A stretch of 63,146 nt of DNA, the filler included, from Octopus bimaculoides (Eukaryota): NCBI RefSeq assembly GCF_001194135.2. It is 7 parts of 7 records of this genome, joined end to end, with 100 filler letters (N's around TTAATTAATTAA, not from the genome) between each part and the next. Parts side by side here need not be neighbours in the genome. Positions count along the whole stretch, not along the records: positions 11,759 to 36,594 come from NC_068992.1; 6 more parts are not named here. One strand, written 5' to 3'. Positions within the stretch are counted from its first letter, which is position 1. Every line of letters starts with the position of its first letter. This document shows, one piece after another, positions 14,106 to 36,594 of the stretch. The notes below the pieces were generated by a model that did not search any database, was not told the DNA's origin, and saw nothing but the letters and a program-made list of their open reading frames with translations. Made by a program: the position numbers and the translations under genes.

Positions 14106-15053
14106 TCTGATTTGCATGGTAGATTCCCAAAGATAGTTGCAGTAAATAGTAATAGTGAGAAAGGGTTATTGTTGTAGAAAAGAAGGCTGAAGGCAGAGAC
14201 AATAGGTTTGTTAGTAGCTGCACAAGACCAAGCATTAAGGAATAATTGGATAAAAGCCACAATAGGCAATTCCAAGTAGATTTCCAATGTAGATTATGCT
14301 AATCAAAAGAAGAATGTGTTACTCATATAGTTAGTGAATGTAGCATGCTGGCACAAATAATACAAGAAAGGACACGACAATCTAGGGAGAGCAACCAACT
14401 GGCAGCTAGGTAGAAAGCTAAGATTTGAACATACTGATAAATGGCATGAAGAGGAACCTAATAAAGTACTAGAAAGTAAGAAATAAAAGATGTTGAGGAA
14501 CTTTAACATTCAGACTGACAAATTAATAGAAGCTAGAAGGCCTGATTTGTTAGTAGTAGATAAAGAGAATATAATATGCCAGATAATTGACTTTACAGTC
14601 CTAAATGATGGAAAATATTAATATGAGAAATATAGAGAAAATAGTTAAGTACCAGGAGCTAGTTATTGAATTACAGAGACTACGGAAAGTGCAGGTAAAA
14701 GGTATCCCAGCAGTTATAGGTGCATTAGGAACTATCCCTAAATCTCTGAAATAATAGATAGAGATGAGCATAAAATCCAATTTAGTACAGATGCAGAATA
14801 CATTGTTATTAGGGACATCAAGGATACTTAGCAGGGTTCTTGGCATCAAAGATTACTTGCTGTAACCCAATATGTGTGTTCTTTGCATCTAACGCTACTT
14901 TCAGATTCTGCAGGACTAGCCGAACAGAATCAGCAATAAATAGCCTCCTATGAATTACCGTTGCTCCCTGTAGACGCTACCGAATCCGACCCCGACATCC
15001 GGATCTTAGGATTCTTTTCTTTTCCAACAGTCTAATCTGTTGAGTGTGTATGA
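14106..15053 (+). mobile_element. 5'-truncated R4/Dong-like RLE non-LTR retrotransposon (C-terminal ORF relic plus 3' UTR)
   Basis: With stops and frameshifts it reads LHGRF...LKAETIGLLVAAQDQAL...CRLC..KEECVTHIVSEC (CCHC knuckle)...RHD...KWHEEEPNKVLE...IQTDKLIEARRPDLLVVDKE...IIDF...EKIVKYQEL..EL.RL...PAVIGALGTIPKSL...LLLGTSRILSRVLGI. Flanked by (TAA)n/(AAC)n. Confidence 0.9.
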
Positions 15054-15069
15054 ATAACAATAACAATAA

Positions 15070-15285
15070 TAACCCTTTCTACTGAACGCACAATGCTGAA
15101 CAATTATTGGGGAGGGGACTAGTCGATTATATCGACACCAGTGTTTCACCGGTACTCAATTTATCGACCCCGAAATGTTGAAAGGCAAAGTCAACCCTGG
15201 AAAAATTAAACTCGGAAGGTGGCACCTGGCGAAATACCGCTAAGTATTTCGCCCGGCGTGCTAACAATATTGCCAGTTTGCCAAC

Positions 15286-15288
<3 letters not shown>
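15070..15288 (-). mobile_element. SINE family B copy
   Basis: ccctttctact...tagtcgattatatcgac...atttatcgaccccgaa...gaaataccgctaagtatttcgcccggcgtgctaac; embedded in (AAT)n. Confidence 0.9.
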
Positions 15289-15325
<37 letters not shown>

Positions 15326-15374
15326 CAACAACAACAACAACAACAACACCAACAACAACACCAAAACCATCAAG

Positions 15375-15580
15375 GACAACCATTTATATCATTGACACAA
15401 AGCCTGATATTTTGATGCATGTTGCTAGTCCATTATATCGATACAAGAGCGCAACTGGTATTTATTTCATCGACCCCAAAGAATGGATCTAAGCGAAACT
15501 TGAACTCCGAATGTAATGGCGGGCAAAAGTCGTCAGGCATTTTGTTCAGTGTGCTAATAGTTCTGTCATCTCTGCCACAA
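15375..15580 (-). mobile_element. SINE family B copy (older)
   Basis: gcgcaactggtatttatttcatcgacccc...ttgaactccgaatgt...gtgctaatagttctg. Confidence 0.75.
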
Positions 15581-16927
15581 ATGTTTCTAATATTGATAGG
15601 AATAGAGGGTTATTATGAAGTAGCATCATAGTGTTTAGAAAGTGGTAGTAGAAGATAACTGGAAAAATTTACATCAAAACAAAAATCAAAATTCTAAATG
15701 TAGTAAAATTATCATAGCCAGCATAAAATGTGCATAAATAGAAGAATAATAGGCTGCCACAAATGATTGAAATATTTCGAACAAAAAGCAGTAACATGTA
15801 TGTCCCTGTTTAGCTGCTTAAGATCAATCCCTAGACTATAGAAACAAAATAGGTGGCTGGGATCAAATGTAAACTCTGCAACTATTAAAATGAGATATTT
15901 GGTCACCTTACTTCTGACTCACTGTCATTGGTATAGGATATTCACAGCTACGAAAAACACGGCAACTAGGATCTTCGGAAAATATCTTAACAGCAATAAC
16001 TGTGATGCTCTCAAGTTGTTTACCCTCCATACAATATAAACGTGACCTGATTATGACAGTCTGTGAATTTTCCCCACAATCTGATACTAAAATCTTAGCA
16101 GACTGCGAAGGTGAAAATTACAGGTTTGGGAACGAACGGTCCTGTTCTGTCAAAATTTCACTTTTGTCATAATGTAACCAGAAATATAAAAATTTTAAGG
16201 AATTTGTAGTGGAAAAGATTTGATTAAAAAGCAGAATTTTCATAGCGTTGAAGAAAACTACAAACTGACTCACAAATGCGCAAGGTTATTCAAAAATATA
16301 ACATGTATCTAACACAGCTAATCACATAATGCATCGTACGCAACAATTTTGAACTTAATACCACAACAACTTACGCAGTAAAAGTTCTTGACCACTCCCC
16401 AAACATACGCTACACAGTTACTATCCCAAAACAAAACGTGATATATATAAAAAGTCAGAAACCAACGAAGGTCGTTGTAAGTAGGAGTTATTTTGGTGAG
16501 AAATTACAGTCACATATGCCTCAACTTACAATATCGATAAATCAAAAAATACGATGGAGAAGCCAAGTTATCTTGGCCTATATTTGATTGCAGTAGATGA
16601 TGAAGAATGCATCTGTCGGCTGATATGACAATCTTGATGGTTTCAATAATGAACAGCCTATCAGCTTGATTTAACATACAAACTCAATTAAAGGAATACA
16701 ATCAGAACATAATTAGCAAGAGAAAGTAATCAGGTCACCATATATTGCATCATCCTATAACTAGTGCAGCGTTTTCAGTTGCATAAACTAAAAGTCGGCG
16801 GGGGACGGGTTAAAATACCTGCATTAACTTGCGGTAAAAGCAGGTAGTAATTTTACCTAGTTATTATTCGTAGTGCAAGGTTTGAAGAGTGCAGTTCCAT
16901 TTTAACAATTATCTTTTCAAAGCTATG

Positions 16928-17143
16928 ATGGAAATGACAAAAGAGCATATTCGACAAAGAGCATATTCGCATATGAGTTCAATAAAGGCAACAAGTCAAC
17001 GGAAAGTGCGAGGAATATTCATGCAGTATATGGGGATCGGACAATAAGCGTAAACCAGTGTCAACAGTGGTTCAAGAAATTCAAAGCTGCAGACTACAAC
17101 CTAGAAGTATAACAAAGCCGCGTTATTTATGGTATGACCCAAA
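16928..17143 (+). mobile_element. Mariner transposon relic: N-terminal HTH joined directly to a TIR-like end
   Basis: Reads MEMTKEHIR, then after a local duplication/frameshift YEFNKGNKSTESARNIHAVYGDRTISVNQCQQWFKKFKAADYNLE, typical of the mariner/SETMAR first HTH. The reverse complement of 17117-17142 (TTGGGTCATACCATAAATAACGCGGC) resembles a mariner TIR. Confidence 0.8.
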
Positions 17144-18080
17144 ACAAATATATGCGAAACCTTATTGCTACAGACTTCGGAAAAACAGCCCGGATATTTT
17201 TGTCTGTGTCAACGAGGAAAGAATTGCTTTGTCATTGAAATCAGAAATAGACTAAAGATTTCTGGGAACTATACGTGTATTTTTGGAGTTATTGTCTGCA
17301 TAATATCTTATATTCTACTTTTCCGATTCTTCCTTTCAGTTAAAACTGAAGTGATTCTTATTTCAACACATGCACCTAATGACGGTTTTAACATAATATC
17401 ATTGTAATTGCTATGTTTCTGAATTTCCAACGTTCAATATTTCCTGGATAAAAATGAAATTTTTAGGACATGCATGTTCATGTAGATTCAAGAGACCACA
17501 AGTGATGGTTCTGAAAACAGAGCTTGCGATCTCTTACCAGTTTGCCACGAATATGACGAGCCACGAGTCTAAATCCTCATACATGCCCATTACCGCTATC
17601 TTACTAATTTCCATATATTGCGTAGCGGTCAGTTTATTTCTTGTGTCCACCTGCTTGTGGCTCACTTAAACTTTGTGTCAAATTCAGTAAATCGGACGAA
17701 GCGCTAACACGACTTTTATCTGTTAAACTCGATGAAAGCTAACAATGTGGTATGACATGGACAGGACACATGGCCTATGCCTACCCGAGAAAATGCAGAA
17801 GCATCCAATTGCTCATATGTTTGTGAGTGTCTATGATATTCATAATCGGAACAGGAACGAAAATGCAAATTGCCAATATAAGAATTAATTTCACTACAAT
17901 GAAAAACAGAGAAGTGAAAAATCCAACTATTCACTGTCAATTAAATACTATATATGTGTATGCATACATACATACATAATTGCATACATAAATACATACA
18001 TACATACATACATGCATACATACATGCGTGCATGCATACATACATACATACACACATACATACATACATACATAAGAATG

Positions 18081-18111
<31 letters not shown>

Positions 18112-20084
18112 GCGCACACACATACACACATATAGACGCATTCACTCACATACCTGTTTGTGTGGTGTTTTGTAAATGTCACTGCAAAATTCAGAACGTT
18201 GCTTTTAATATCTCCATGACAAAAATATACAAGGTAAGGGTAAAATACATTCTTGTTACTATAGTGACATTTACGGAACGACAAACATTGAATAGATAAT
18301 TTCGAAACGATAAACAAATATGAAGTCATATAAATTATAAATTCTGAATACGAGGAAAGGAATTCATGCCATTTTATTCTCCCATTAATGTGTTTTATGT
18401 AAGAAAGTATTAAAATATTACATCTGAATGTTGCATAATATAAGTAACCAAATATATATTTAGAATATATATTTCCCATCATAAAACACTATTTATGGAA
18501 CCAATCAATTTGCACGTATTCTAACTGAAAGGAGCATAATAACCAAGTATAATTTTACCAAGATATGAGAGGTAAGAAAATATGTAGCTGGTGATCTCTA
18601 CACTAAATTTTAATAAATGTCAAATTATCATTTAGAATTGAAAAGAAAATATTTTTCATGTTTCTCAGCATAATAAATTTCGACTCATAAAGGAATTAAA
18701 TGCATAATAATATATATATAAACTACTCATATAATATATATGTATATGTAATTTTGTGTTTGTGAGTGTATGTACAGAAATAGACACATATGGTTGCATG
18801 TACACAACACACATTCATGCACGCACAATCATACACGTATACATATATATATATGTATAAACTCGCATCTGCCAATGTACAAAAGAAAGAACGACTAAGT
18901 GAGTTTGAAATGATTTATGCAAATGAATTATCATTTCTTAAAATCGAGCCAAAAGGAATGCATTGAACAAACCTAGATTAATGTATATTAATTATTCATA
19001 TATTCCTTTTCACAGATGTTTAAAAGATAACTCTTTGGTGGGTGATTATACTGAAATATTTATGTCATTTGCGTATTAAAAAAAATTATAGCATTTTTAA
19101 AATTCTACTTTTCCCGTTACTCACTATCATATTCTTCGTCTTTTTTATATATGCTTCTGCTTTTCGCTTCTTCTTTTTTTTACTTTTTCTTATTCTTCTT
19201 CGCTTTCTTATTTGCCATCGTAGAAGTAGAAATTGTTTTCTTCTTCTTCTGTTTTAGTGACCTTAGTGAAGGAATGACTAAGATCGATGCCTCAGGATAT
19301 TATTAGCCGAAATTATTTCATGTGGAGCCAAGCTCTCTTAAAGTTCTCCAAGTAATGCTTTGAAGAGGATGTTAATGGTGGAAAAGGTGATGCGGATTTC
19401 AATTAAATTTTATAAAAGGGAAATGATGCTGCGAAATTGATTTGGCTTACTGAAAATGCATCTATAATTTCACGGCAAGAACTGAGAAACAGCTTTTCCG
19501 TTTGGTGTATCAGAATAACTTTGCTGTGTATTTGATTGCTTCATTATTCCCCCTGAATTGTGACCCTTCCAATTTGAGGCTCCTTTCTCACCATTCTTCT
19601 GTTGTTCTCAGCTCATTGTAGTCTATTTCATTATTATCACTTCACCATTTTAAAAACTTTCTTCACCTTGCTCCTAATTAGTTGATCTCGACTTCGTCTT
19701 CTCTTGTTTGTGGTTTCTATTATCTTGCACTGTTCTACTCTGTGACTGTTGCCAATAACTTAAGTCCCTTATATAATTGTTATTTTGAATATTATTGCAG
19801 TCGTCATTGTTGGTGTTTGTGTTATTGTAGTAATTTATTACTTTATGATCTACTAACAATACTACTTCATGGACTACTTCGTCTTATGCTACCTGAATTG
19901 AAACTGCTTTTTCCAATGACGGTTTATACTATTCAAAAATCTAAAGATTTAACTTAGAGGCATGTATTTGGACGACAAGCAAATAAATGCATTCATGAGT
20001 AATTTACCTAAGTATCCCAAATTGATCCTTAATAATACAGGTGCGATCACTAGATTTGTTTTTTCACAGGGGTTGTATTCGATA

Positions 20085-23388: not shown

Positions 23389-24274
23389 CAGAATCGGAAT
23401 TTTTGCGTTGAGGCCAGCTTTCAAACTAGTATTCTCTTCTAGTAACTAGGAGTCCAACCACAAGAGAGTATATCTCATCTACCATGTGAGAAAACCATCC
23501 TGACTAAACTGAACTGCTCTATACAATCTTTGAAAATAAACATCGTCACTTCTGATGCATCTCAATATACATATATNNNNNNNNNNNNNNNNNNNNNNNN
23601 NNNNNNNNNNNNNNNNNNNNNNNNNNNNNNNNNNNNNNNNNNNNNNNNNNNNNNNNNNNNNNNNNNNNNNNNNNNNNNNNNNNNNNNNNNNNNNNNNNNN
23701 NNNNNNNNNNNNNNNNNNNNNNNNNNNNNNNNNNNNNNNNNNNNNNNNNNNTATATATATATATATATATCCTGCGTTCTGTGCTAATCAAAACAAATTA
23801 ATAAAAGCTTGTTAAAATCGAAAATACTGAATGCCGTGAGAGGAATACATTCTGGTATAAAATGCAAGTGCATCGAGGGCCACGAATTACAATTACTATT
23901 AGAATAATCATACTACGTTAAAGTATAGACTCATTAATTTTAAGTAGGAAGAGAATATATAAATATCACTTGGTCATACGCTTCAAGTGGAAGATAGTAC
24001 ATTTCCTTGTACACATAGACATAAAAAGAAAGATACGTATACACCACACACAATATCCCCCCCCCCACACACACACGCGGGTACACGTACGTAGACATAG
24101 AGACACATACATGCGCGCGCGCACACACACATGCACACATATGTCATAACACCTCTATTGAGAAAGCTGTTGTCTCGCGATATTGTGGCAAGTTAGCCGG
24201 TGAGGGAATGATTTTATACAAATAAATATAATCTGTATTCAGAATGATCATCCACTACGTGAACAAAAAACACA

Positions 24275-24337
<63 letters not shown>

Positions 24338-24359
24338 TTAGGGAGAGAATTCAAAACAA

Positions 24360-24530
24360 AAACCTAAAGAAGAAGACAGGTGGTGTAGACAACAAACAGA
24401 TGTATATAACACTCGGGAAGTGAAACAGTCTTTAACGTTTCGAGTCTACGCCCTTCCACAGAAAGGAACACAGAAAGAAACAAGGAGAGAAAAAAAGAAT
24501 GTGTAGTAGCTAGCGATCTATCATGACGAA
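24360..24530 (-). mobile_element. Penelope-like terminal fragment with hammerhead-like motif (24430-24465)
   Basis: Minus strand CTTT-CTGTGGA-A-GGGC-GTAG-ACTC-GAAAC-GTT-AAAG; homologous to 7380-7545. Confidence 0.5.
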
Positions 24531-27208
24531 TCATATATATATGTATGTGTGTGTGTGCGTATGTGTGTGTGTGCGTATGTGTGTGTGCGTATATCAAACT
24601 GAAGTTTTGAATTTTTACTTATAGTATTTACACATTTTCTAAATACCGAGAAGGGTTCTCACTATATACATGGTTTTATAATTCATGTACGATTCATAAA
24701 ATATCCCTAATAATATTTCTCTATACTAGTTCTCTGAGGTCTGCTGCCGGAAGAGAAATCTTATTCTGCAAAATATAACATGAAGCGCGAATTAAGATAT
24801 ATTATATATGTTCACCTCAAGTGAATGATCAAAATATACTGTGTTTTACTTCGCAAATCCAAAGGCAAATCATACCTACAGCTAAGATAGATATTTAACA
24901 TAAGATATATGTATTTCCTCCATATGTGAATGGGTCACTGTCTGCAATATAATAATGTAATATCGTATTTTACTCTCCCACTTATATGCCACAGGACATA
25001 CCAGCATCTTTTCAATGAAAAAGCTGTTGAGTGCATAATTTCCTTGAGGTTGTTACCTTTATTGATATATTTCGGCATATCTAGGATGTGACACAATTTG
25101 TTTGGTAAATACAATTATATTACCTTATATAATTGTTTTATATATTTGTTCTCATATTCAGCACGTTGTTTAAACGTATAATGTATAAAGTAAATTTTTC
25201 TGAAGCCTCATTATCTCGCCCGCGTGTGTATCCGCTCTCTTATCCAAGAGATAATACATTTCTCAATGTACAATCTAAGGTAGACATAAAACATAGTTAC
25301 TTTCTTTGAAATTTTGGAAAAAGAATCGCTAATTTCTTACAAACCAATACACCATAAAAATAATTCTATGCATATCGATGATTATGGTTATGCCAATATG
25401 CCTACACGTCTACAAATACAAACGTTGAGCTTGAAATGTAAAAAGTATGCTCATAACAAAATCACACACATATGTGTATATTAATTTGCCTACATACACA
25501 TAGGTACACATATACGTTTGCCAAAGAAAGCACACACACAGAAACATACACATTTGTTATCAACAAATGCATCTAAAATTTAAAATGAATATTTTCTCTC
25601 TATTGCGTCACCTTTTGGTATTATAATTTGGTGGTGAAATATATTTCAAGACAGGCAAAAATTACCTTTGTATAGGCTTTGTTGCTCCCAACCTAATGGA
25701 GAAAATGTTGAATAAGAACTATCTCGTTTCAAATGCAACAAAGATTAATGAAGATATTGGTGAGAATGGCACAACAAAGGAGTAAAGGAAACGAATATTT
25801 CTTTTTTATATTTATTAAATTTTCGTAGAGAGACATTACGCCGAGCCATTAACAATTCTATGAATAAGTCACGAAAATTGAGCAGAAAAGAAGGCAATGA
25901 CGGTCATTTTCATAATGGATAAAGACATCTATAGATTATGCGCCTGAAATTTAAATCTTATAATAGGAACGGAATATCAAATGAGATCTAAAGAACGGAA
26001 TGGGCTTGAAGTCGACGTGTAATTTTTGAAAAAAATTATTTAAGAAATCCTATTATTATTTAATGGGTAAAAGCAGAAAAGGTATGTGCACATACAGAAA
26101 ATCATTCAAACTTACGTCGGTACACGCATGCAAGAATGCATTAAAATATGTGTGTATAGATATGTATGCATGCATGCGTGTGTATATATATGTATACATG
26201 TATTATGTGTGTATGTTGTGTGCGTGTACATGAATATGTATATAATACGCTGTGTGTCAACATATATATAAGTATACATTCTTCTAATTTAATGCCAATG
26301 CCAAGAATATTTTAAAGAATATGTAATTATATCTGTGAGCATGTATATATTGTATGTGCATTCCCCTTTATTCACCCCTCCCCACACACACATATATATA
26401 TATATGTATGTATGTATGTATATATAAATATATGAATATACATGTGTGTGTTCATGTATACACAAAAAACATGCGCATATATGTAACCAGGTAGTTATTG
26501 ATCTAACTGCATTTAACTAACTAAATATTTAGTTGTGTCTAGATGTATGCATATATGCAGGTATACATATATATATATAATACGTGTGTGTGTGTGTGTG
26601 CGTGCGTGTAGTGTGCGTGTGTGTAGTGTGTACAGAGATAGATGGATAGATTGAGAGAGAGATGACAGTAAATTATTTACCCAGGAGTGTATATGTAAAT
26701 CGTTTTTAAGGTATCTATGAGCTTGTTATTCATGAATGATTGTTCAAAGAAACTGAAATAAATCTCAGATGCTTCACTCTACACGATACACTTAGGCGGC
26801 ATTCGAGGCCTCATTTAATTATTATTTTCCCTATTCCATTGCATATGACATTTGAGCACTCTATACTTCACTTGAAATCAGTGCCATAATTTTGAGAGAT
26901 TTAAGAAATAATTGTTTACACCTGACTACAGTAAAATTCGCTGATAATAAAATAATATGCTCGTGAACCCCACTGAAGACAGTAGGCATATATTGCATAT
27001 CTTTCAATGTTTACATGACATGATTAGAAACATTTCTTGGACATTACAAGTTAAATGTAGAAAATAGTATGCAGTGTTGGTGTATCTTATTGCACCGATA
27101 TTTTCTGCGGATACCGTAAGTTTTCCTTTCTCAAAGTCATCAGTTTGTTCCACTTATATTTAAGTGTGTGTGCATTTCTCTCTCCCTCTCTGTCTCTCTT
27201 TCTCTCTT

Positions 27209-27262
<54 letters not shown>

Positions 27263-27669
27263 CATATATGTATTACACTTAATTATTATCGTAGTTTTTA
27301 TTCCTTAGTTATCCGTCGACGTCATCAATAATTGTATATGAAAATAATCATTTTCTAAGTCAGTCTTTTTTGGTGGGGTGGTGGATCGGGGATTATTTTT
27401 CTATGTAGATTTCAAATTGTCAAAAAATATACAATTGGTATGGTACTTTTTATCTTTCATTTTTATATAGTAAATTAGTTATTCAATGACGTCGCTGTTA
27501 ATTGATTAAATAAATGTTTTCAGTTGAATTTGATTTAGGTGTTCCTTTTTGTCAGCGTTTATTAACATTTGAATTTTTTTCTTTCAGATGTTCATTTGGA
27601 ACTTAACCAATTGGGATTACCTTCATAATGCTGTGTTGATATATATTTTTTAAGATATTATTAATTTTA

Positions 27670-27886
27670 AAGACTGCGAGCTGGCAGACTTTAGCAATCC
27701 AGGCGAAATGCTTAGCGGTAGTACGTCGGTCTTTATGATCCGAGTTCAAATTCCACCGTGGTCGATTTATTGCCTTCCATTCTTTCGGGGTCAATAAATT
27801 AAGTACCAGTTGCGTATTGGGGTCGATCTAATCGACTGGCTCCCTCCCCCCAAATTGTGCGCTTTGTGTCTATCATTGTTATTATT
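27670..27886 (+). mobile_element. SINE family B copy, sense orientation
   Basis: A-box-like GAGCTGGCAGA, B box GAGTTCAAATTCC, body ttccattctttcggggtcaataaattaagtaccagttg, (TTA)n tail. Confidence 0.9.
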
Positions 27887-28029
27887 TTTAATAATATTGC
27901 TTATATGTGTGTGTATGACCGCAGCCACTTGGCTGAAACACATAAATAAATAAATAAATATATATATATTCATATATATACCTATATCTATATACAAATG
28001 TATGTATGAGTGCATACACATATATATAT

Positions 28030-28065
<36 letters not shown>

Positions 28066-28453
28066 ATGTGTGTTTGTGTGTGTTAATGCAATTTAAACCA
28101 TTGTTGGACTTCTAGGGTTTGATCTAAAGTAAAGATACGATTTTCTTCGTGCATATTATTTAAAGTGCTAAGGTTTCGGAAGTGGGCGTTACCCGCAGTG
28201 TCCAAACATTGTTTCAGTGTATATCTCAAGTAGTGTGTCTGCAGAACGCGTTCACCACTTACGGCTTCTCTGCGTCATCTGCGATACTTTGCATTCATCG
28301 TTAGAGTTAGGTTCAGCAATTCCAGGGTGCATATAGGATATATTTTAAAGATAATAGATAAAATGGTAACGAAAAGGAAATATTAGTACATTTGCTTCGG
28401 CTTCTGGTTTCACTGCTCCCTAGAAGTCGTGGAACGATGTAATAATATCAGAG

Positions 28454-28536
28454 GCAACGCACAATGCAAGAGAGCCTCTTCAGGTAGTGTAAGCATATTA
28501 TGCCACCTGAAGAGGCTCTTTTACACTGTGGGTTAC
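28454..28536 (-). ncRNA. Candidate pri-miRNA hairpin (predicted pre-miRNA 28465-28523, minus strand)
   Basis: 39-position fold-back with 31 Watson-Crick pairs, including a perfect 15-bp core (28471-85/28505-19). Matches no miRNA I recognise; no expression evidence. Confidence 0.45.
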
Positions 28537-28583
28537 AGAAATATATGTTATAACACACACACACACACACATACACACACACA

Positions 28584-28615
<32 letters not shown>

Positions 28616-30545
28616 TATATGTATATATATATATGAAGAGAGATTGATACAGTAAGAGACAAAGATACAAATAGTGTTTGCTGCTGCCGCATGGAGGGAA
28701 TTTTCGACAACTGATTAACATCTATAACGAAGGTGATCGCACCTTGTGCCAAAGACACCTGTTGTTTTGTAAGTGGTAAGGTTTTCTATCGAATCTACAG
28801 AGCCCTGTAATCTTCCATATAGCTGATCTCCATTAGTGCAGTTATGGCATATTTCCTCCTCTCACACCAGCCCTAGAATCGTCTCCGTTTAAAGTATTTC
28901 GCTTATTTAAAAATATGCCACTGCTGATGAGGAACCGCTATAGTAATTCTTTCACAGACTTGTGCAGAAGAAGGCTTATGGAGACCATTCTCACACAGTT
29001 CTTTCAGCCTAAATTAATAAACCGTTTTTTCTCTTCTTTTCTAAATTTCATACTCTCTTTTCCTCTATTTATATGTATCAATTTTTTGCAATACATATGT
29101 CGTCATAAATAGCTTCGACATGGTGCCAAATTTGTTACTAAAAGTGTGTGTATCTTACATCCTATGCTAATGCGGGTTGGCAGTTAAGTTAATGCTTGCG
29201 GAAATAAACAATTTTTTTCATAAAATACAAAAAAGTATCTGGGAGACTAACCAGTAACCGTTCAAATACCATCCTTGTGATGACTGTTAACGTGTACATA
29301 TCTGATCACATATGCGATCACAGTTATCAGATATAAAACCAGAGTTTTATTTGTAGATATATGTTATGGTTTGTCAGAAGAGCTACAAGATTAAATGGAT
29401 TATACTGGCTGTAAACTATCCAGAAATAGTTTTTTTCTATTCCCGTATCGTTTTCATGAGGAATTGCGTATGTTCCCAAGAGAAATTTCAGAGAAAACCT
29501 ATAAACGTATTCAAACATATGGATATACTTCGGTTATATGTGCTTCTTTTTTAGTTTCAAGCTGCAATTTATGTAAGTGAAATGGTGGAAAATATCTCGT
29601 ATATCGTACATAATGAGTGCATTATATAATTAAGGTTATCATAGTGATCTAATATAGCATAGAATTTATAGATGTATTAAATGCATTTGATAACAATAAA
29701 AAGTAAACTAGAATGCTACTGATAAAACAGAAGCATAATAATATTAATAGTGATATTGATTATAAAAATAATAATAAGAAGGATATCAGTAATAATAAAA
29801 ACAATGACAACTATAATATTAAAGATAATATTTATGGAAATAATCAAAATATTACATGACTCATATTTAAAAAATATAAAACATAAGATAAGTTTTAGTA
29901 CCAGCTTAAATTTATAATCGGTTTACTGCGTTATACTATCCTTATAAACTAAGAAATTATTATCAATAATTTAAAGGAAATGATTACCTTTATAAGTTTG
30001 TAGTCTTAGATTTGACTCTCAAATCCTAAATTATTTTATACTGCATCGTATATATAGGTATAATTTCATAACAATAAAATTACATTACAAAGAGTCTTCT
30101 GCAACAGTCTTTAATATAATCAGTGAAATTACATATATTACGAGCTATTACATCTAATTATGCGACGTTTGGAAGAACATTCTCTCTTCTTAATTTCAGA
30201 AAAGATCATGTCCACGTGATCATGAGATATACGGCGACTAATTGTGATTTTGAAACCCTGACGGCTAAGGTGTACAATCGGCGCAATGCACGCGATAAAT
30301 CAGATGAGTAGCCCCCAGGAAATCCATTGAGTAAGAAGTATTGTGTTCTATGTATACATATATACATGTGTTTGAGCTTGTGTGCATATACATATATGTA
30401 ATATGTATATGTATATGCATGTATATATATATATGTAATATGTATATGTATATGCATGTATATATATGTATGTAAATATGTATGTATATATATGAGTATA
30501 TACATATATATATATATATGCATACATTTAAAGATAGATAGATGG

Positions 30546-30592
<47 letters not shown>

Positions 30593-30600
30593 AATGTTTG

Positions 30601-31370
30601 AGACAAGAATATGACTACTGGGAGGATCAATGAGTTATCATCGACACCATCGGTCACTAACGCGCGGTGGAGACGGCAGCGACAAATGAAGTTGGAGGAG
30701 GTGTGGGTAGTCTTCAACCCCTCCAGGGGGTATGCCACCGTTGGCAGTCATTTCCACTCAAAAATCAACCGTTCACATGTCCATGTCCGCGNNNNNNNNN
30801 NCTTCAACCCCTCCAGGGGGTATGCCACCGTTGGCAGTCATTTCCACTCAAAAATCAACCGTTCACATGTCCATGTCCGCGTCGTCGTCGTCGTCGTCGT
30901 AAGCGGCGAGGACGAAGAAGGACAAAGTAGGAATAGAAGTGGTCCAGACCCCGGCAAACGCGCATGGATTATCCGGTGACGGCTAGTTGTACATGTCCGC
31001 CGCCGTCCCGTGGTGGACTGGAGTAATTGAAAGTTCGTCGAGTAAAATGGTATTTAATTCGACGTCTGCGCATCGGGCCGCTGTGGTGGCTATTGCGGGT
31101 CGAGCTAGAGAGCTCGATTCGGCAGCGATGCGTCGGGAGGGGCATGTACCTTGCCGGACGCACTTTCGCAGGAAGAGCCTACCGACCGACCGAGTGAGCC
31201 GACTTCGGTCCCGCGCTCTATTACTGCCTCTGCGATTGATTTCAGCAGGAATGTGGTCAACGTGCGTGCAAACGGTGATGACAACGCGCCCGCGTTTTGT
31301 GTGTGTGTGTTTGTGTGTGTAGTGTGCGTGCGTGCGTTCGTGCGTGCGTGTGAACATGAAAGTAAATAAA
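30601..31370. promoter_or_regulatory. CpG/GC-rich unique island, possible promoter or 5' exon
   Basis: Sharp rise in GC and CpG against the AT-rich background, no match to any repeat elsewhere in the window, internal (GTC)n and (CGAC)n tracts. No recognisable ORF. Confidence 0.35.
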
Positions 31371-34300
31371 AGTGTTTAAGTAACAACAGATAAGAAAAGA
31401 TAATTAACTGGAGAATGAACTCAATCTCATTTGTAGTTAAAAGTGAACAACATATGAAAGATACAAATATAGATCTTCCAAACATAGCATATAATTACTA
31501 TAGCATAATACTGATATTATATAAATGCATAGTGCCCATGCAATAGTAATCGTTTTCATTTGTCAGTGCTAATGAAGTTTGAAGATTTTTTTCTAATTAT
31601 GTCAATACATTTTTAACGCTCTCATTTAATGTGTTCATTGCACAATAGCGATTGCTGATATGGGAAATCTCATTCATTTATATCAGGCTTACCTCATTGA
31701 AGAGCAACGTAAACAGCAAGAAATAGTAACAATCCTTTTTTAAGTGAAATCTTAAAATTAAGAGGAAATGCAATACATTGTAGAGAATGGTCTCTGATAT
31801 ATAGTTCAAATGATGTACTTAGAAATCTAGCATATTTTACAATATATATCCATCTACTTGTCAACACCTGCAAAATAGGCACACGTAAGAAACAATAATA
31901 CTTATTAAAGAATTCAAAGAACTTATACCATTTTAAAGATATTCCTTTAATATCTGCGATAATTCTTTTATATAGGAACTTATCTAGTTTTGTACAAAAC
32001 TTAAACGAATCACAATACTTTCTCATGTCTTTCATACCTAATTTCCTGTATTTCCTAATGTTTGCTTTATTGATATTTCTATATAGTTTGATTCTAATAT
32101 TCTAAATTAAATATATTTGCATAATTGTTTAATCCTTTGAGAACTACATATAGTAGCAGCTATTGTGAAAAAATATATATCTATCTAAATGTTTGAATGT
32201 GTAATATTTGCATTTATGTTGTGCATCACTAACTACTTCAGATCAACAACGTGCCGTGACAGATCGGATTAAACGAAGCTAATTTTAATCTTGTGGAATA
32301 TGTTACACTATACATCATATGTTAATTACTAAATGTATCTCTATTGAAAAAAAATGTGATATATTGAATGAAGGCACATGCAATGAAGAGCACAACAATT
32401 TACCATATATCAATGTATATGTTTTGCTACATACTGATGAAATTCATGATTTCTCTTGTATTCGTAAAATCATCCGTAATTTAAGTAATTTAAACAACTG
32501 CAAACAAAAAGCACTGCACGTTTACTATATGCGGATATAAATGTCCTGCAGGTGAGATAGTAATGTCCCGTAATCATCGAAACCACTGGCATCAACACCT
32601 AAGAAATGTAATACCATAAACTAGCTTCTGCCTCGTTAGTCAGTTACAGTCACGTTGAGATAGTGGTAATCTATCGACAGCAGTTCGTGAACACACTCCC
32701 CGTCTCAAAGTAGACAGGAAGTTAATGCTACTTAATTGTCAACATGTGTGGAACACAGAATTGTAGTGATTGTGAGCAATAAGCTTTGTAGGGCACTTCC
32801 AATTTCACAATATCTGCCATACTCTGAACATTGTCCTGTTTCTCCTAAAAAGTGATTTTGTGTGTGTGTGTGTGGTGTCTACAAACGAAAGAAAATATCA
32901 ATACATGCTGTAGATTTTCTATTTGTTAAGAAGAATCAATCTAAAATGTACTCCATTGCTGTTCACATTTTTTGCACAAATTTTAGACTTACAAAGCAAT
33001 ATTTTGTAAATATAGAAATCTGTTTGTGTGCCAAACAGCAGCGAGTCCAAATGTGAAAATATCTGACGTGATCTAATGTGTGTCAGATAACGATGATAAT
33101 ATTATCTTTCGACATATTGCATTTTATCGAAATTCCTTCCGGCCCATAGTCGGTAGTTTCCAGATGTGATAATTATGTGGATTAGGATAATAATGTGGAT
33201 TGCTCGCCGCCCTTTTGTCTCAAGTATGTGATATTAAAAACGAAAAATTGAATAAAGAAGCCGAAAATTTCTATAGCTATTTTGATACCAAGCTGAAGGC
33301 GTTATGATATATGTTCTATATCCAAAGACACCCTAATCGTCAGGCATGGCATTTCTGTTCTTACTACACATTTACTGAATCAGCTGTTTTCTGGGAGTAT
33401 TGTTTACTGTAGAGTTTGATCTAGAAGTAGAAGAACACATGACTTCTTATTTGAGTTAGACGTTACTGCGGTTCGTGAGTTTTTCTCGTGTTTTGGTCGG
33501 AAATTTCTTAATATACGAATTTCTTTTCGACAATAGTTGTTATTCAACGGTTGATTAAATCAGGTAAACTGACGTATGGTGTATGAATGATGAAAAACCC
33601 AAAACAGTTATATAGATACATACAAACACACGCACACACATACATATACATGCACACACACACGCACACACACATGTCTATGCGGTATGCGCATGTAAAA
33701 GGAATGTGGTATACGCATGTGTGAGTTGCGTATATATGTGTGTATCTATCTCACACTAGGCGCATATTACAGGTGCATATATTAAAAAATTAATTAATCA
33801 ATAATTCATTATCAAAAGCTCATAGAGCTATAATAGTTTGTATTCATTTCAAACTACTTTTAGGGAATGAAAATTGACTATACATATCTATTATTCAACA
33901 AATATTTCTATGCGAAAATTCGAAGTTATTTCAGAAGTTGCTTAGAGTTATATAGTTATATTAGGAGATATCAGAGAATCTATATAAGCTTAAGAGACAA
34001 AAGTAAAAAACAAAAAAAAAAAACGTGCAATTTGAATGGAAACATAAAGGAAAACGAATAAACAGTAACTCTGTAACGTAAACGTTTCTGCATGCATCGG
34101 TCTTATATAAGTAACTAAAATTAGCAATTGAATTAAGAATTTTGATAGGAAGTAGGGATGAGATTTATTGAAAAATCGACAGAGATAATTGTAGAATGAA
34201 TGAGAACAGGGAAAGAATTGTCTCAGAGAGTGCAAATCGAAGGAGATACAAACAGAAAATGAGACTGAAAGGAGATGCATTTTTATGAAAGAATAATAGA

Positions 34301-36247: not shown

Positions 36248-36594
36248 CTTCTCACGGACGTGCTGTCACATCGGCTGCGAAGGTAAACGTTTATTTGACC
36301 TTTTACTGTCCACATTTTGTTGGAATTTTTAAATAATTTTGTTGCGAAGCACCTAGGCTTCATTTGTGTGTATTTTCAAGGGCAGGAATTGACCCCCAGG
36401 GGCAGTTTCGGCCCTAGCAAAATACAAAAATTTCCTTCTTGACATTTGAAAAATGTCGAGAAACATAATTTTGGAACGCTTGTCTTGTTCTTTTGACAAG
36501 CATTTCCCGAGGCTTCAGATGCCAGAAGAGAAAAAAGAACAGAATAGCGCGTGCTCATGCAGTGACACGAACGCAGTTGCTATAAACGTCACAA

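What the first reader, a model, noticed from the sequence alone, without database searches (positions are those of the whole stretch)
28454..28536. Candidate novel microRNA: 83-nt hairpin with Drosha/Dicer-compatible geometry on the minus strand
Seen: arms pair in one register (coordinates sum to 56990) over 39 positions with 31 Watson-Crick pairs. On the minus strand four further positions are G-U wobbles. Placing the 5' cut 13 nt above the stem base gives 5p UAAAAGAGCCUCUUCAGGUGGC (28523-28502) and 3p UACCUGAAGAGGCUCUCUUGCA (28486-28465). Both are 22 nt and U-initial, with 2-nt 3' overhangs at both ends, a 15-nt loop, an 11-nt lower stem on the 3' side and UG at -14/-13. There is no CNNC at the canonical distance and no apical UGU. 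The sequence is unique in the window and matches no miRNA I recall. Established: coleoids have a large expansion of lineage-specific miRNA families. The alternative is a decayed fold-back or MITE (an AG dinucleotide flanks both ends).
Basis: partly seen in the sequence, partly recalled or inferred. Interest (0 to 1): 0.72.

Follow-up and report, generated by a model that had tools for sequence, protein, structure and literature searches.

The report
Lone miRNA-shaped hairpin, gene status unproven
An 83-base inverted repeat really does fold into a hairpin with the dimensions of a microRNA precursor, but nothing available here shows it is a microRNA gene rather than an ordinary, slowly decaying DNA palindrome.

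Summary
Positions 28454-28536 form an imperfect palindrome with 39 paired positions, 31 of them Watson-Crick. It folds at -50.3 kcal/mol on the minus strand (z = -11.6) and -46.8 on the plus strand (z = -8.9). It is the strongest 90-nt fold in the 24.8-kb piece and the only strong one that is unbranched and not low-complexity. It is unique there and far beyond chance.

The microRNA reading is untested, and the indirect evidence is neutral to slightly negative:
- The arms differ by 7 transitions and 1 transversion. The transitions give G-U on the minus strand 4 times and on the plus strand 3 times, so there is no strand-specific compensation.
- The stem is more perfect than typical curated miRNAs.
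- CNNC and apical UGU are absent, and an mGHG-like mismatch sits two positions off register.
- There is no neighbouring hairpin and no Rfam family match.
- The held lists of octopus and squid miRNAs contain no match.

Small-RNA reads, genome copy number and orthologues could not be reached, and the source organism could not be identified.

Best reading: a solitary inverted duplication that is at most a proto-miRNA. I put the probability of a real miRNA at about 0.2.

The parts
28454..28536 (-). 83-nt imperfect palindrome that folds into a hairpin. The minus strand is the slightly better RNA fold, but both strands fold.
   Evidence: RNA folds; DNA fold, -24 kcal/mol, z -6.5; pair table; top fold of the piece.
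28498..28536 (-). 5' arm on the minus strand (hairpin positions 1-39).
   Evidence: pairs with 28454-28492 in one register (coordinates sum to 56990).
28454..28492 (-). 3' arm on the minus strand (hairpin positions 45-83).
28488..28502 (-). 15-nt apical region: a 2x2 internal loop, a 3-bp mini-helix and a 5-nt loop.
   Evidence: dot-bracket.
28502..28523 (-). Hypothetical 5p product UAAAAGAGCCUCUUCAGGUGGC. It is placed by rule (cut 13 nt above the basal junction), not observed.
   Evidence: Geometry only. Its 5' end sits on U-G, A-U, A-U and an A.C mismatch, so it would be the favoured guide if the hairpin were processed (inference).
28465..28486 (-). Hypothetical 3p product UACCUGAAGAGGCUCUCUUGCA. 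Placed by rule, not observed.
   Evidence: Geometry only.
28458..28460 (-). G-C-G on the 3' strand opposite C-C-C, with a C.C mismatch. This is an mGHG-like element at positions 5-7 from the basal junction; the canonical position is 7-9.
   Evidence: for the pairs; canonical definition read in PMC7668254.
28553..28635 (.). Compound (CA)n(TA)n microsatellite 17 nt from the palindrome. It is complementary to the (TA)n(TG)n block at 27942-28083.

Best explanation
The feature is a solitary, partly decayed DNA palindrome. It is a short local inverted duplication, 39 positions per arm around a 5-nt centre, lying next to a compound microsatellite in non-coding, transposon-littered animal DNA.

Shown: because it is a palindrome, either strand, if transcribed, would fold into a roughly 35-bp hairpin that happens to have the dimensions Drosha and Dicer accept.

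Inferred: it arose by a single mutational event, for example a replication template switch, and has since drifted neutrally. It is therefore at most a proto-miRNA, meaning raw material from which a miRNA could evolve, and not an established miRNA gene.
For: 1. The palindrome is real, far beyond chance and unique in the piece.
2. Both strands fold strongly as RNA (-50.3 and -46.8 kcal/mol), and the plus strand, the one tested, also folds as single-stranded DNA. That is what a DNA-level repeat predicts.
3. The eight arm differences are 7 transitions and 1 transversion. The transitions give G-U on the minus strand 4 times and on the plus strand 3 times. This is the even split expected from neutral decay, with no sign that pairing is protected on one strand.
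4. The stem is nearer to perfect than curated animal miRNAs usually are (the comparison is from my own knowledge). It has 17 uninterrupted pairs in a row (16 Watson-Crick and one G-U), only two 1x1 mismatches in 34 positions, and -60.6 kcal/mol per 100 nt at 47% GC.
5. CNNC and apical UGU are absent, and the mGHG-like mismatch is two positions off register.
6. There is no second miRNA-like hairpin within the piece and no Rfam family match (best is mir-245, 30 bits against a gathering score of 70, with a different seed).
7. None of six candidate 8-mer seed sites appears in the held part of the Octopus vulgaris miRNA target table, while positive controls are found 34 and 99 times. There is no arm match in the files held for the Euprymna paper, whose content I did not inspect, or in any full text.
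8. The ends of the palindrome are sharp and lack a convincing target-site duplication, so a one-off duplication fits slightly better than a transposon insertion.
9. The surroundings are non-coding, with mariner and retrotransposon-like remnants and dense microsatellites.
Against: The geometry is a good fit to a canonical pri-miRNA: 34 stem positions, single-stranded flanks, an open 15-nt apex, a basal UG at exactly -14/-13, and a strong-type mGHG trinucleotide nearby.

The 15 central positions of the proposed duplex are perfectly conserved between the arms, while 5 of the 6 main-stem differences lie in the lower stem. This pattern is suggestive of selection on the duplex but is not significant (p about 0.17).

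The negative database checks are weak. The octopus tables held are truncated, MirGeneDB itself could not be queried, and Rfam does not cover cephalopod-specific families. Absence of expression has not been shown, because it could not be tested.
Confidence: 0.5

Rival explanations
1. It is a bona fide, lineage-restricted canonical microRNA gene, most likely on the minus strand. It would be transcribed as part of a longer Pol II transcript and cropped by Drosha about 13 nt above the basal junction. Dicer would then cut it to a 22-nt duplex, with the 5p strand (UAAAAGAGCC...) favoured as guide.
For: - Stem length is about 35 bp, with single-stranded flanks, a 15-nt apex and 2-nt overhang geometry.
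- A basal UG is present, and CCC/GCG resembles the strongest mGHG type, CUC/GCG.
- The minus-strand apex is more open than the plus-strand apex.
- The hairpin is single-copy in the piece.
- If the source is a coleoid, that clade gained 90 new miRNA families, and the authors call their count an underestimate (PMC9699675).
- Molluscs appear to lack a separate endo-siRNA pathway, so a Dicer product would enter the miRNA Argonaute (PMC12479628).
Against: - There is no expression, conservation or copy-number evidence of any kind.
- The G-U wobbles are not strand-biased (4 against 3).
- The stem is atypically perfect.
- CNNC and UGU are absent, and the mGHG-like element is off register.
- There is no match in the held octopus target tables, in the files held for the Euprymna paper, or in Rfam.
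- The prior is low: roughly 160 curated miRNA genes in a genome of nearly 3 Gb, against many repeat-derived hairpins. The genome size is from my own knowledge and assumes an octopus source.
Confidence: 0.2
2. It is one copy of a dispersed fold-back or miniature inverted-repeat element, or the internal hairpin of an unrecognised repeat family. It would be present many times elsewhere in the genome.
For: - Near-perfect short palindromes in animal genomes commonly come from such elements (own knowledge; for example MADE1 elements underlie the human mir-548 family).
- The piece carries a Mos1-type mariner remnant and other dispersed repeats.
- Octopus genomes are reported as about 66% repeats, including Tc1-mariner and MITE families (PMC13282606).
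- Arm divergence of about 0.24 substitutions per site fits an old insertion.
Against: - There is only one copy in 24.8 kb.
- There is no TA, TTAA or other convincing target-site duplication. The best flanking direct repeats (AATAT, CAGA) are offset from the palindrome ends and at chance level.
- At 83 bp it is shorter than most MITEs.
- The termini match no transposon end that I could test.
Confidence: 0.25
3. It is a functional double-stranded element of another kind. Possibilities are an ADAR editing or binding substrate within a long transcript, a non-canonical Drosha cleavage site, or a DNA cruciform affecting replication at the adjacent microsatellite.
For: - The duplex is long and nearly perfect, and the tested strand also folds as DNA.
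- Hairpins in introns and UTRs are noted as ADAR substrates in octopus (PMC9699675).
- The palindrome adjoins a compound microsatellite.
Against: No transcript, editing or conservation data are available. Nothing distinguishes this hairpin from a neutral one.
Confidence: 0.05

Closest known systems
Canonical animal pri-miRNA hairpins as curated in MirGeneDB
   Same: A single unbranched imperfect hairpin with about 35 stem positions, single-stranded flanks and an apical region of at least 10 nt. The geometry allows two 22-nt products with 2-nt 3' overhangs, and a basal UG is present.
   Different: There is no read evidence, no second-species evidence and no family assignment. The stem is more perfect than usual, CNNC and apical UGU are absent, and the mGHG-like mismatch is at positions 5-7 instead of 7-9.
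Transposon-derived palindromic miRNA hairpins (for example human mir-548 from MADE1 MITEs; own knowledge)
   Same: A near-perfect short palindrome that folds equally from both strands, in repeat-rich DNA that contains a mariner remnant.
   Different: It is single-copy in the sequence available, has no TA target-site duplication and shows no recognisable transposon termini.
Short inverted duplications from replication template switching, and the young 'proto-miRNA' hairpins they can seed (own knowledge)
   Same: An isolated palindrome with a small spacer, sharp ends, arm differences dominated by transitions, and a position next to a microsatellite.
   Different: The generating event cannot be demonstrated from one sequence, because no ancestral or orthologous state is available.
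Rfam mir-245 (RF00816), the best-scoring family on the hairpin alone
   Same: A generic hairpin shape and a shared UUGCAUUGU / GCUCU stretch in the lower 3' stem.
   Different: It scores 30.3 bits against a gathering score of 70. The match rests on the lower stem and flanks, while the 42-position centre of the model is left unaligned. From memory, the mature seed also differs. It is not a member.

Membership tests
Canonical animal microRNA gene (MirGeneDB criteria, as listed in PMC12539619) | Imperfectly paired precursor hairpin with at least 16 paired nucleotides in the stem | tested here: met
   32 pairs in 34 main-stem positions plus a 3-bp apical helix.
Canonical animal microRNA gene (MirGeneDB criteria, as listed in PMC12539619) | Small-RNA reads from both arms | not testable with these tools
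   No small-RNA data are accessible. The criteria were read.
Canonical animal microRNA gene (MirGeneDB criteria, as listed in PMC12539619) | 5' end homogeneity of the reads | not testable with these tools
   No small-RNA data are accessible.
Canonical animal microRNA gene (MirGeneDB criteria, as listed in PMC12539619) | 2-nt offsets left by Drosha and Dicer | tested here: inconclusive
   The structure permits a duplex with 2-nt overhangs at both ends. The cut sites were placed by rule, not observed.
Canonical animal microRNA gene (octopus study criterion, PMC9699675) | Presence of the locus in a second species | not testable with these tools
   No animal genomes are in the collections. Indirect routes failed. 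The criterion was read.
Optimal Microprocessor substrate (human-defined features; PMC7668254) | Stem of about 35 bp between a basal and an apical junction | tested here: met
   34 positions from the basal junction to the first apical internal loop, with single-stranded flanks in the 243-nt centroid.
Optimal Microprocessor substrate (human-defined features; PMC7668254) | Basal UG at the junction | tested here: met
   U28537 is unpaired and G28536 is the first paired base.
Optimal Microprocessor substrate (human-defined features; PMC7668254) | [quoted passage not shown] | tested here: not met
   GCG with a C.C mismatch is present but at positions 5-7 (definition).
Optimal Microprocessor substrate (human-defined features; PMC7668254) | CNNC in the 3' basal segment and UGU at the apical junction | tested here: not met
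   The only CNNC starts 11 nt after the proposed 3p end, and there is no UGU in the apex.
Any described miRNA family in Rfam 15 | Covariance-model score at or above the family's gathering threshold | tested here: not met
   No hit in the whole-piece scan. On the hairpin alone the best is mir-245 at 30.3 bits against 70.
Annotated Octopus vulgaris miRNAs (Zolotarov et al. 2022) | Seed-complementary 8-mer listed for an annotated miRNA | tested here: inconclusive
   None of CTCTTTTA, TTCAGGTA or the four +/-1-register variants occurs in the held part of Data S3, while control sites occur 34 and 99 times. The file is truncated and the source species is unknown.
Miniature inverted-repeat / fold-back transposable element | Target-site duplication directly flanking the terminal inverted repeats | tested here: not met
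   Only AG abuts both ends. AATAT and CAGA repeats are offset and at chance level.
Miniature inverted-repeat / fold-back transposable element | Multiple dispersed copies in the genome | tested here: inconclusive
   One copy in 24.8 kb. The genome itself was not available.
Hairpin-RNA / endo-siRNA locus | Long (hundreds of bp) inverted repeat processed by a dedicated siRNA pathway | tested here: not met
   The stem is only about 35 bp. A survey of 32 molluscs reports no evidence of an endo-siRNA pathway (PMC12479628). This applies only if the source is a mollusc.

The most novel reading that the evidence does not exclude
The hairpin is a young, lineage-restricted miRNA gene caught close to its birth. 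A local inverted duplication created a Drosha/Dicer-competent hairpin that is already expressed and processed from the minus strand. Under octopus repeat-clock calibrations the duplication would be roughly 30 million years old, if the source is an octopus. This would add one unannotated family to the coleoid miRNA expansion and give a concrete example of the still-unknown source of those new loci.
Probability: 0.2. Interest if true: 0.4.

Novelty: new member of a known kind. Interest (0 to 1): 0.2.

Why it matters
If it proved to be processed, it would be one more lineage-specific miRNA. It would also be a clean example of miRNA birth by local inverted duplication, in a clade where the origin of many new miRNA families is explicitly stated to be unknown (PMC9699675). 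That would be useful but incremental.

If it is what it most likely is, a neutral palindrome, it matters mainly as a caution. Perfect Drosha/Dicer arithmetic can be read off any palindrome of about 35 bp once the cut site is placed by rule. Geometry alone therefore cannot nominate a miRNA.

Tried and rejected
1. Reaching orthologous or paralogous loci through spurious ORFs. A six-frame translation of the hairpin and its flanks was searched against the 5.8-billion-protein set, with no hit at E <= 10. Ten window ORFs looked up by exact sequence were absent.

2. Identifying the organism through the mariner remnant.
- The word-indexed search found nothing.
- The exhaustive search found 223 relatives. 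The closest were only 58-74% identical, on anonymous JGI and Logan contigs plus a spider and an ant protein, so they are uninformative.
- A metagenome locus search found nothing.

3. Exact two-arm pattern scans of metagenome, viral and prokaryotic genome collections found nothing. This was expected, since none of them holds animal genomes.

4. Literature. The arm 15-16-mers appear in no full text and in no held supplement of the octopus miRNA paper. The seed 8-mers are absent from its truncated tables. The arm 13-mers are absent from the files held for the Euprymna paper. The mollusc small-RNA survey has no held supplements.

5. Rejected ideas.
- Transib-like ends: the heptamers CACAGTG and CACAATG sit 6 nt inside each end, but the flanks are complementary rather than direct repeats.
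- Mariner-like ends: TCAGGTG lies in the core, but there is no TA flank and the reading implies an implausible 31-bp element.
- Assembly artefact: artefactual palindromes would be perfect, and these arms differ at 8 positions.
- Membership of a larger fold-back defined by the flanking complementary microsatellites: the symmetry centres differ, 28318 against 28495.
- The 11-nt inverted match GACTTCTAGGG / CCCTAGAAGTC at 28105 and 28419 is at chance level.

Full report
**What is there.** On the minus strand, window 28536-28454 reads GUAACCCACAGUGUAAAAGAGCCUCUUCAGGUGGCAUAAUAUGCUUACACUACCUGAAGAGGCUCUCUUGCAUUGUGCGUUGC. It folds into one unbranched hairpin of -50.3 kcal/mol. Two hundred dinucleotide-preserving shuffles average -18.7 +/- 2.7 (z = -11.6), and none reaches it. 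It shows 39 positions, 31 Watson-Crick pairs, and on the minus strand four G-U pairs and four mismatches. The main stem has 34 positions with two 1x1 mismatches, C.C at positions 6/78 and A.C at 17/67. It is capped by a 2x2 internal loop, three A-U pairs and a 5-nt loop. In a 243-nt context the hairpin is retained and its immediate flanks are unpaired in the centroid structure.

**Is it more than chance?** I folded every 90-nt window of the piece on both strands (9754 windows, mean -12.0, sd 6.5). This locus ranks first. The other strong folds are either microsatellite self-pairing or branched GC-rich structures. The arm core occurs nowhere else in the window, and self-BLAST of the piece matches the region only to its own reverse complement. 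By my own binomial estimate, with a match probability of about 0.28 assumed from the base composition, roughly 1e-5 such palindromes are expected by chance in 24.8 kb. It is the product of a mutational event or of selection, not of chance.

With the 5' cut 13 nt above the basal junction, 5p is positions 14-35 and 3p is positions 51-72.
- Both are 22 nt and start with U.
- Position 14 pairs with 70 and position 33 with 51, so both ends carry 2-nt 3' overhangs.
- Fifteen nucleotides lie between the products.
- The lower stem is 13 nt on the 5' side and 11 nt on the 3' side.
- U28537/G28536 is a basal UG.
- There is no CNNC at +16 to +18 (only one starting at +11) and no apical UGU.

All of this is correct, but it is partly circular. 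Any palindrome of about 35 bp yields such products once the cut is placed by rule.

I add one point. The C.C mismatch flanked by G-C pairs (5' CCC / 3' GCG) resembles the strongest mGHG type, CUC/GCG. However, it occupies positions 5-7 from the basal junction, whereas the canonical motif occupies 7-9 with the mismatch at 8 (PMC7668254). These motif rules were defined on human substrates, so their weight in another phylum is uncertain.

**DNA palindrome or RNA gene?**
- The plus strand folds almost as well (-46.8 kcal/mol, z = -8.9) and also folds as single-stranded DNA (z = -6.5).
- The arms differ at eight of 39 positions: seven transitions and one transversion. Each transition gives G-U on one strand and A.C on the other, and the split is four (minus) to three (plus).
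They are not evidence that pairing has been protected on that strand.
- Five of the six main-stem differences lie in the lower 17 positions, while positions 18-32 are perfect. That would fit selection on a duplex, but it is not significant (about p = 0.17).
- The hairpin is also 'too good' compared with what I know of curated animal precursors (own knowledge). It has 17 uninterrupted pairs in a row (16 Watson-Crick and one G-U) and -60.6 kcal/mol per 100 nt at 47% GC.
- The minus strand does have the more open apex. On the plus strand the apex closes to a 5-nt loop. If either strand is processed, the minus strand is therefore the better candidate.

**Age, if neutral.** Eight differences in 39 positions give a Jukes-Cantor distance of about 0.24 between arms, or about 0.12 per arm. 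If the piece is from an octopus, the calibration reported for O. vulgaris repeats (0.09 = 25 My, 0.2 = 56 My; PMC13282606) puts the duplication at roughly 30 My. That is old enough for an orthologue to exist in sister species, which makes the conservation test informative. This estimate is inference and rests on an unverified source organism.

**Transposon test.** The palindrome ends sharply, and the nine positions outside each end do not pair. Only AG abuts both ends. The best flanking direct repeats (AATAT, CAGA) are offset from the ends and are at chance level for AT-rich sequence. There are no TA or TTAA flanks. The heptamers CACAGTG and CACAATG near the ends, and TCAGGTG in the core, recall Transib and mariner termini. 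Their flanks do not behave as target-site duplications, so I treat them as coincidence. The nearest dispersed repeat (27656-27876, related to 15089-15487) is about 580 bp away and does not include the hairpin. Copy number in the genome could not be measured.

**Context.** The piece is AT-rich (about 32% GC) and crowded with di-, tri- and tetranucleotide arrays. It has no credible long ORF and no tRNA, and it contains two N gaps. It carries a Mos1-type mariner HTH remnant (Pfam HTH_48, 8.8e-16). It also carries a frame-broken retrotransposon-like ORF remnant, which I recognised from memory and which has no Pfam hit. The hairpin lies 17 nt from a (CA)n(TA)n array. That array is complementary to a (TA)n(TG)n array 470 nt away, but their symmetry centre is not the centre of the hairpin. 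No second miRNA-like hairpin lies nearby.

**Comparison with known families.**
- Rfam 15 gives no hit on the hairpin in the whole-piece scan. All miRNA 'hits' elsewhere in the piece are microsatellite artefacts far below threshold.
- Scanning the hairpin alone, the best family is mir-245 at 30.3 bits against a gathering score of 70, and the match rests on the lower stem and flanks. Other hits occur on both strands. It belongs to no Rfam family.
- Cephalopod-specific families are curated in MirGeneDB, which I could not query.
- As a partial substitute, I searched the held portion of Data S3 of Zolotarov et al. 2022, which lists 8-mer target sites for O. vulgaris miRNAs. The six 8-mers implied by the proposed 5p and 3p and their +/-1 registers are all absent, while two control sites are found 34 and 99 times.
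- The arm cores are absent from all held supplements of that paper, from the files held for a Euprymna miRNA study, whose content I did not inspect, and from all searchable full texts.
- These negatives are weak. The files are truncated, and the species of the piece is unknown.

**What could not be done.** No collection available contains animal genomes or small-RNA reads.
- I tried to reach related loci through spurious ORFs, through the mariner remnant, and by exact two-arm pattern scans of metagenomic, viral and prokaryotic collections. All returned nothing useful.
- The closest mariner relatives are 58-74% identical, lie on anonymous contigs, or belong to a spider and an ant.
Composition, repeat load and draft-assembly gaps are compatible with it.

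**Verdict.** Three of the four MirGeneDB criteria are not testable here: reads from both arms, 5' homogeneity and observed 2-nt offsets (PMC12539619). The same applies to the second-species requirement used for octopus (PMC9699675). Only the structural criterion is met. Given the low prior and the lack of any strand-specific or conservation signal, I rank the readings as follows:
- A solitary, neutrally decaying inverted duplication, at most a proto-miRNA: 0.5.
- A copy of an unrecognised fold-back or MITE family: 0.25.
- A genuine young miRNA: 0.2.
- Another double-stranded function: 0.05.

The low prior reflects the roughly 160 curated genes in an octopus genome against abundant repeat-derived hairpins. 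If the locus is transcribed in a mollusc, a Dicer product would be expected to enter the miRNA Argonaute, since no separate endo-siRNA pathway has been found in that phylum (PMC12479628). Mapping existing small-RNA libraries and a genome-wide BLAST would settle the matter quickly.

Noticed in passing
window 16906-17109 (+): Remnant of a Mos1-type mariner transposase N-terminus (Pfam HTH_48, E = 8.8e-16). The downstream frames are broken. The closest relatives among 1.84 billion representatives are only 58-74% identical and come from anonymous contigs, a spider and an ant.
   Followed up: yes
window ~14175-14900 (+): Frame-broken ORF remnant with the motif ...IQTDKLIEARRPDLLVVDKENIICQIIDF... 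I recognise it from memory as the 3' part of a non-LTR retrotransposon ORF. It has no Pfam hit, so the assignment is untested.
   Followed up: partly
window 15089-15487 and 27656-27876: Two copies of a dispersed repeat in opposite orientation, 70-72% identical. The first is interrupted by (TAA)n/(AAC)n arrays. The family was not identified.
   Followed up: partly
window 30712-30791 and 30802-30881: An 80-nt stretch repeated with 100% identity on both sides of a 10-N gap. This is most likely a gap-closure or scaffolding artefact of a draft assembly. A second gap of 175 N lies at 23577-23751.
   Followed up: partly
window 27942-28083 and 28553-28635: Compound microsatellites (TA)n(TG)n and (CA)n(TA)n are mutually complementary (up to 87-92% over 38-71 nt). 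They bracket a 470-nt segment with the hairpin at its right edge. In a long transcript they could pair and enclose the hairpin.
   Followed up: partly
window 17950-18140, 24270-24600, 26130-26610, 27960-28070, 30350-30590, 33610-33745: Dozens of sub-threshold Rfam 'miRNA' hits (mir-297, mir-466, mir-3149, mir-1277 and others, 25-58 bits against gathering scores of 75-119). All fall on TA/TG/CATA microsatellites and are composition artefacts.
   Followed up: yes
window 30600-31500: GC-rich island (0.44 against about 0.32 for the piece) with CpG-rich sequence and a branched -47 kcal/mol fold at 31069-31158 (+). There is no Pfam or Rfam match, and its nature is unknown.
   Followed up: partly
window 36339-36523 (+): Two further short hairpins (-35.6 and -28.4 kcal/mol per 90 nt) close together near the end of the piece. 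One has a stem of roughly 20 bp (GTATTTTC...GCAAAATAC). They were not examined further.
   Followed up: no
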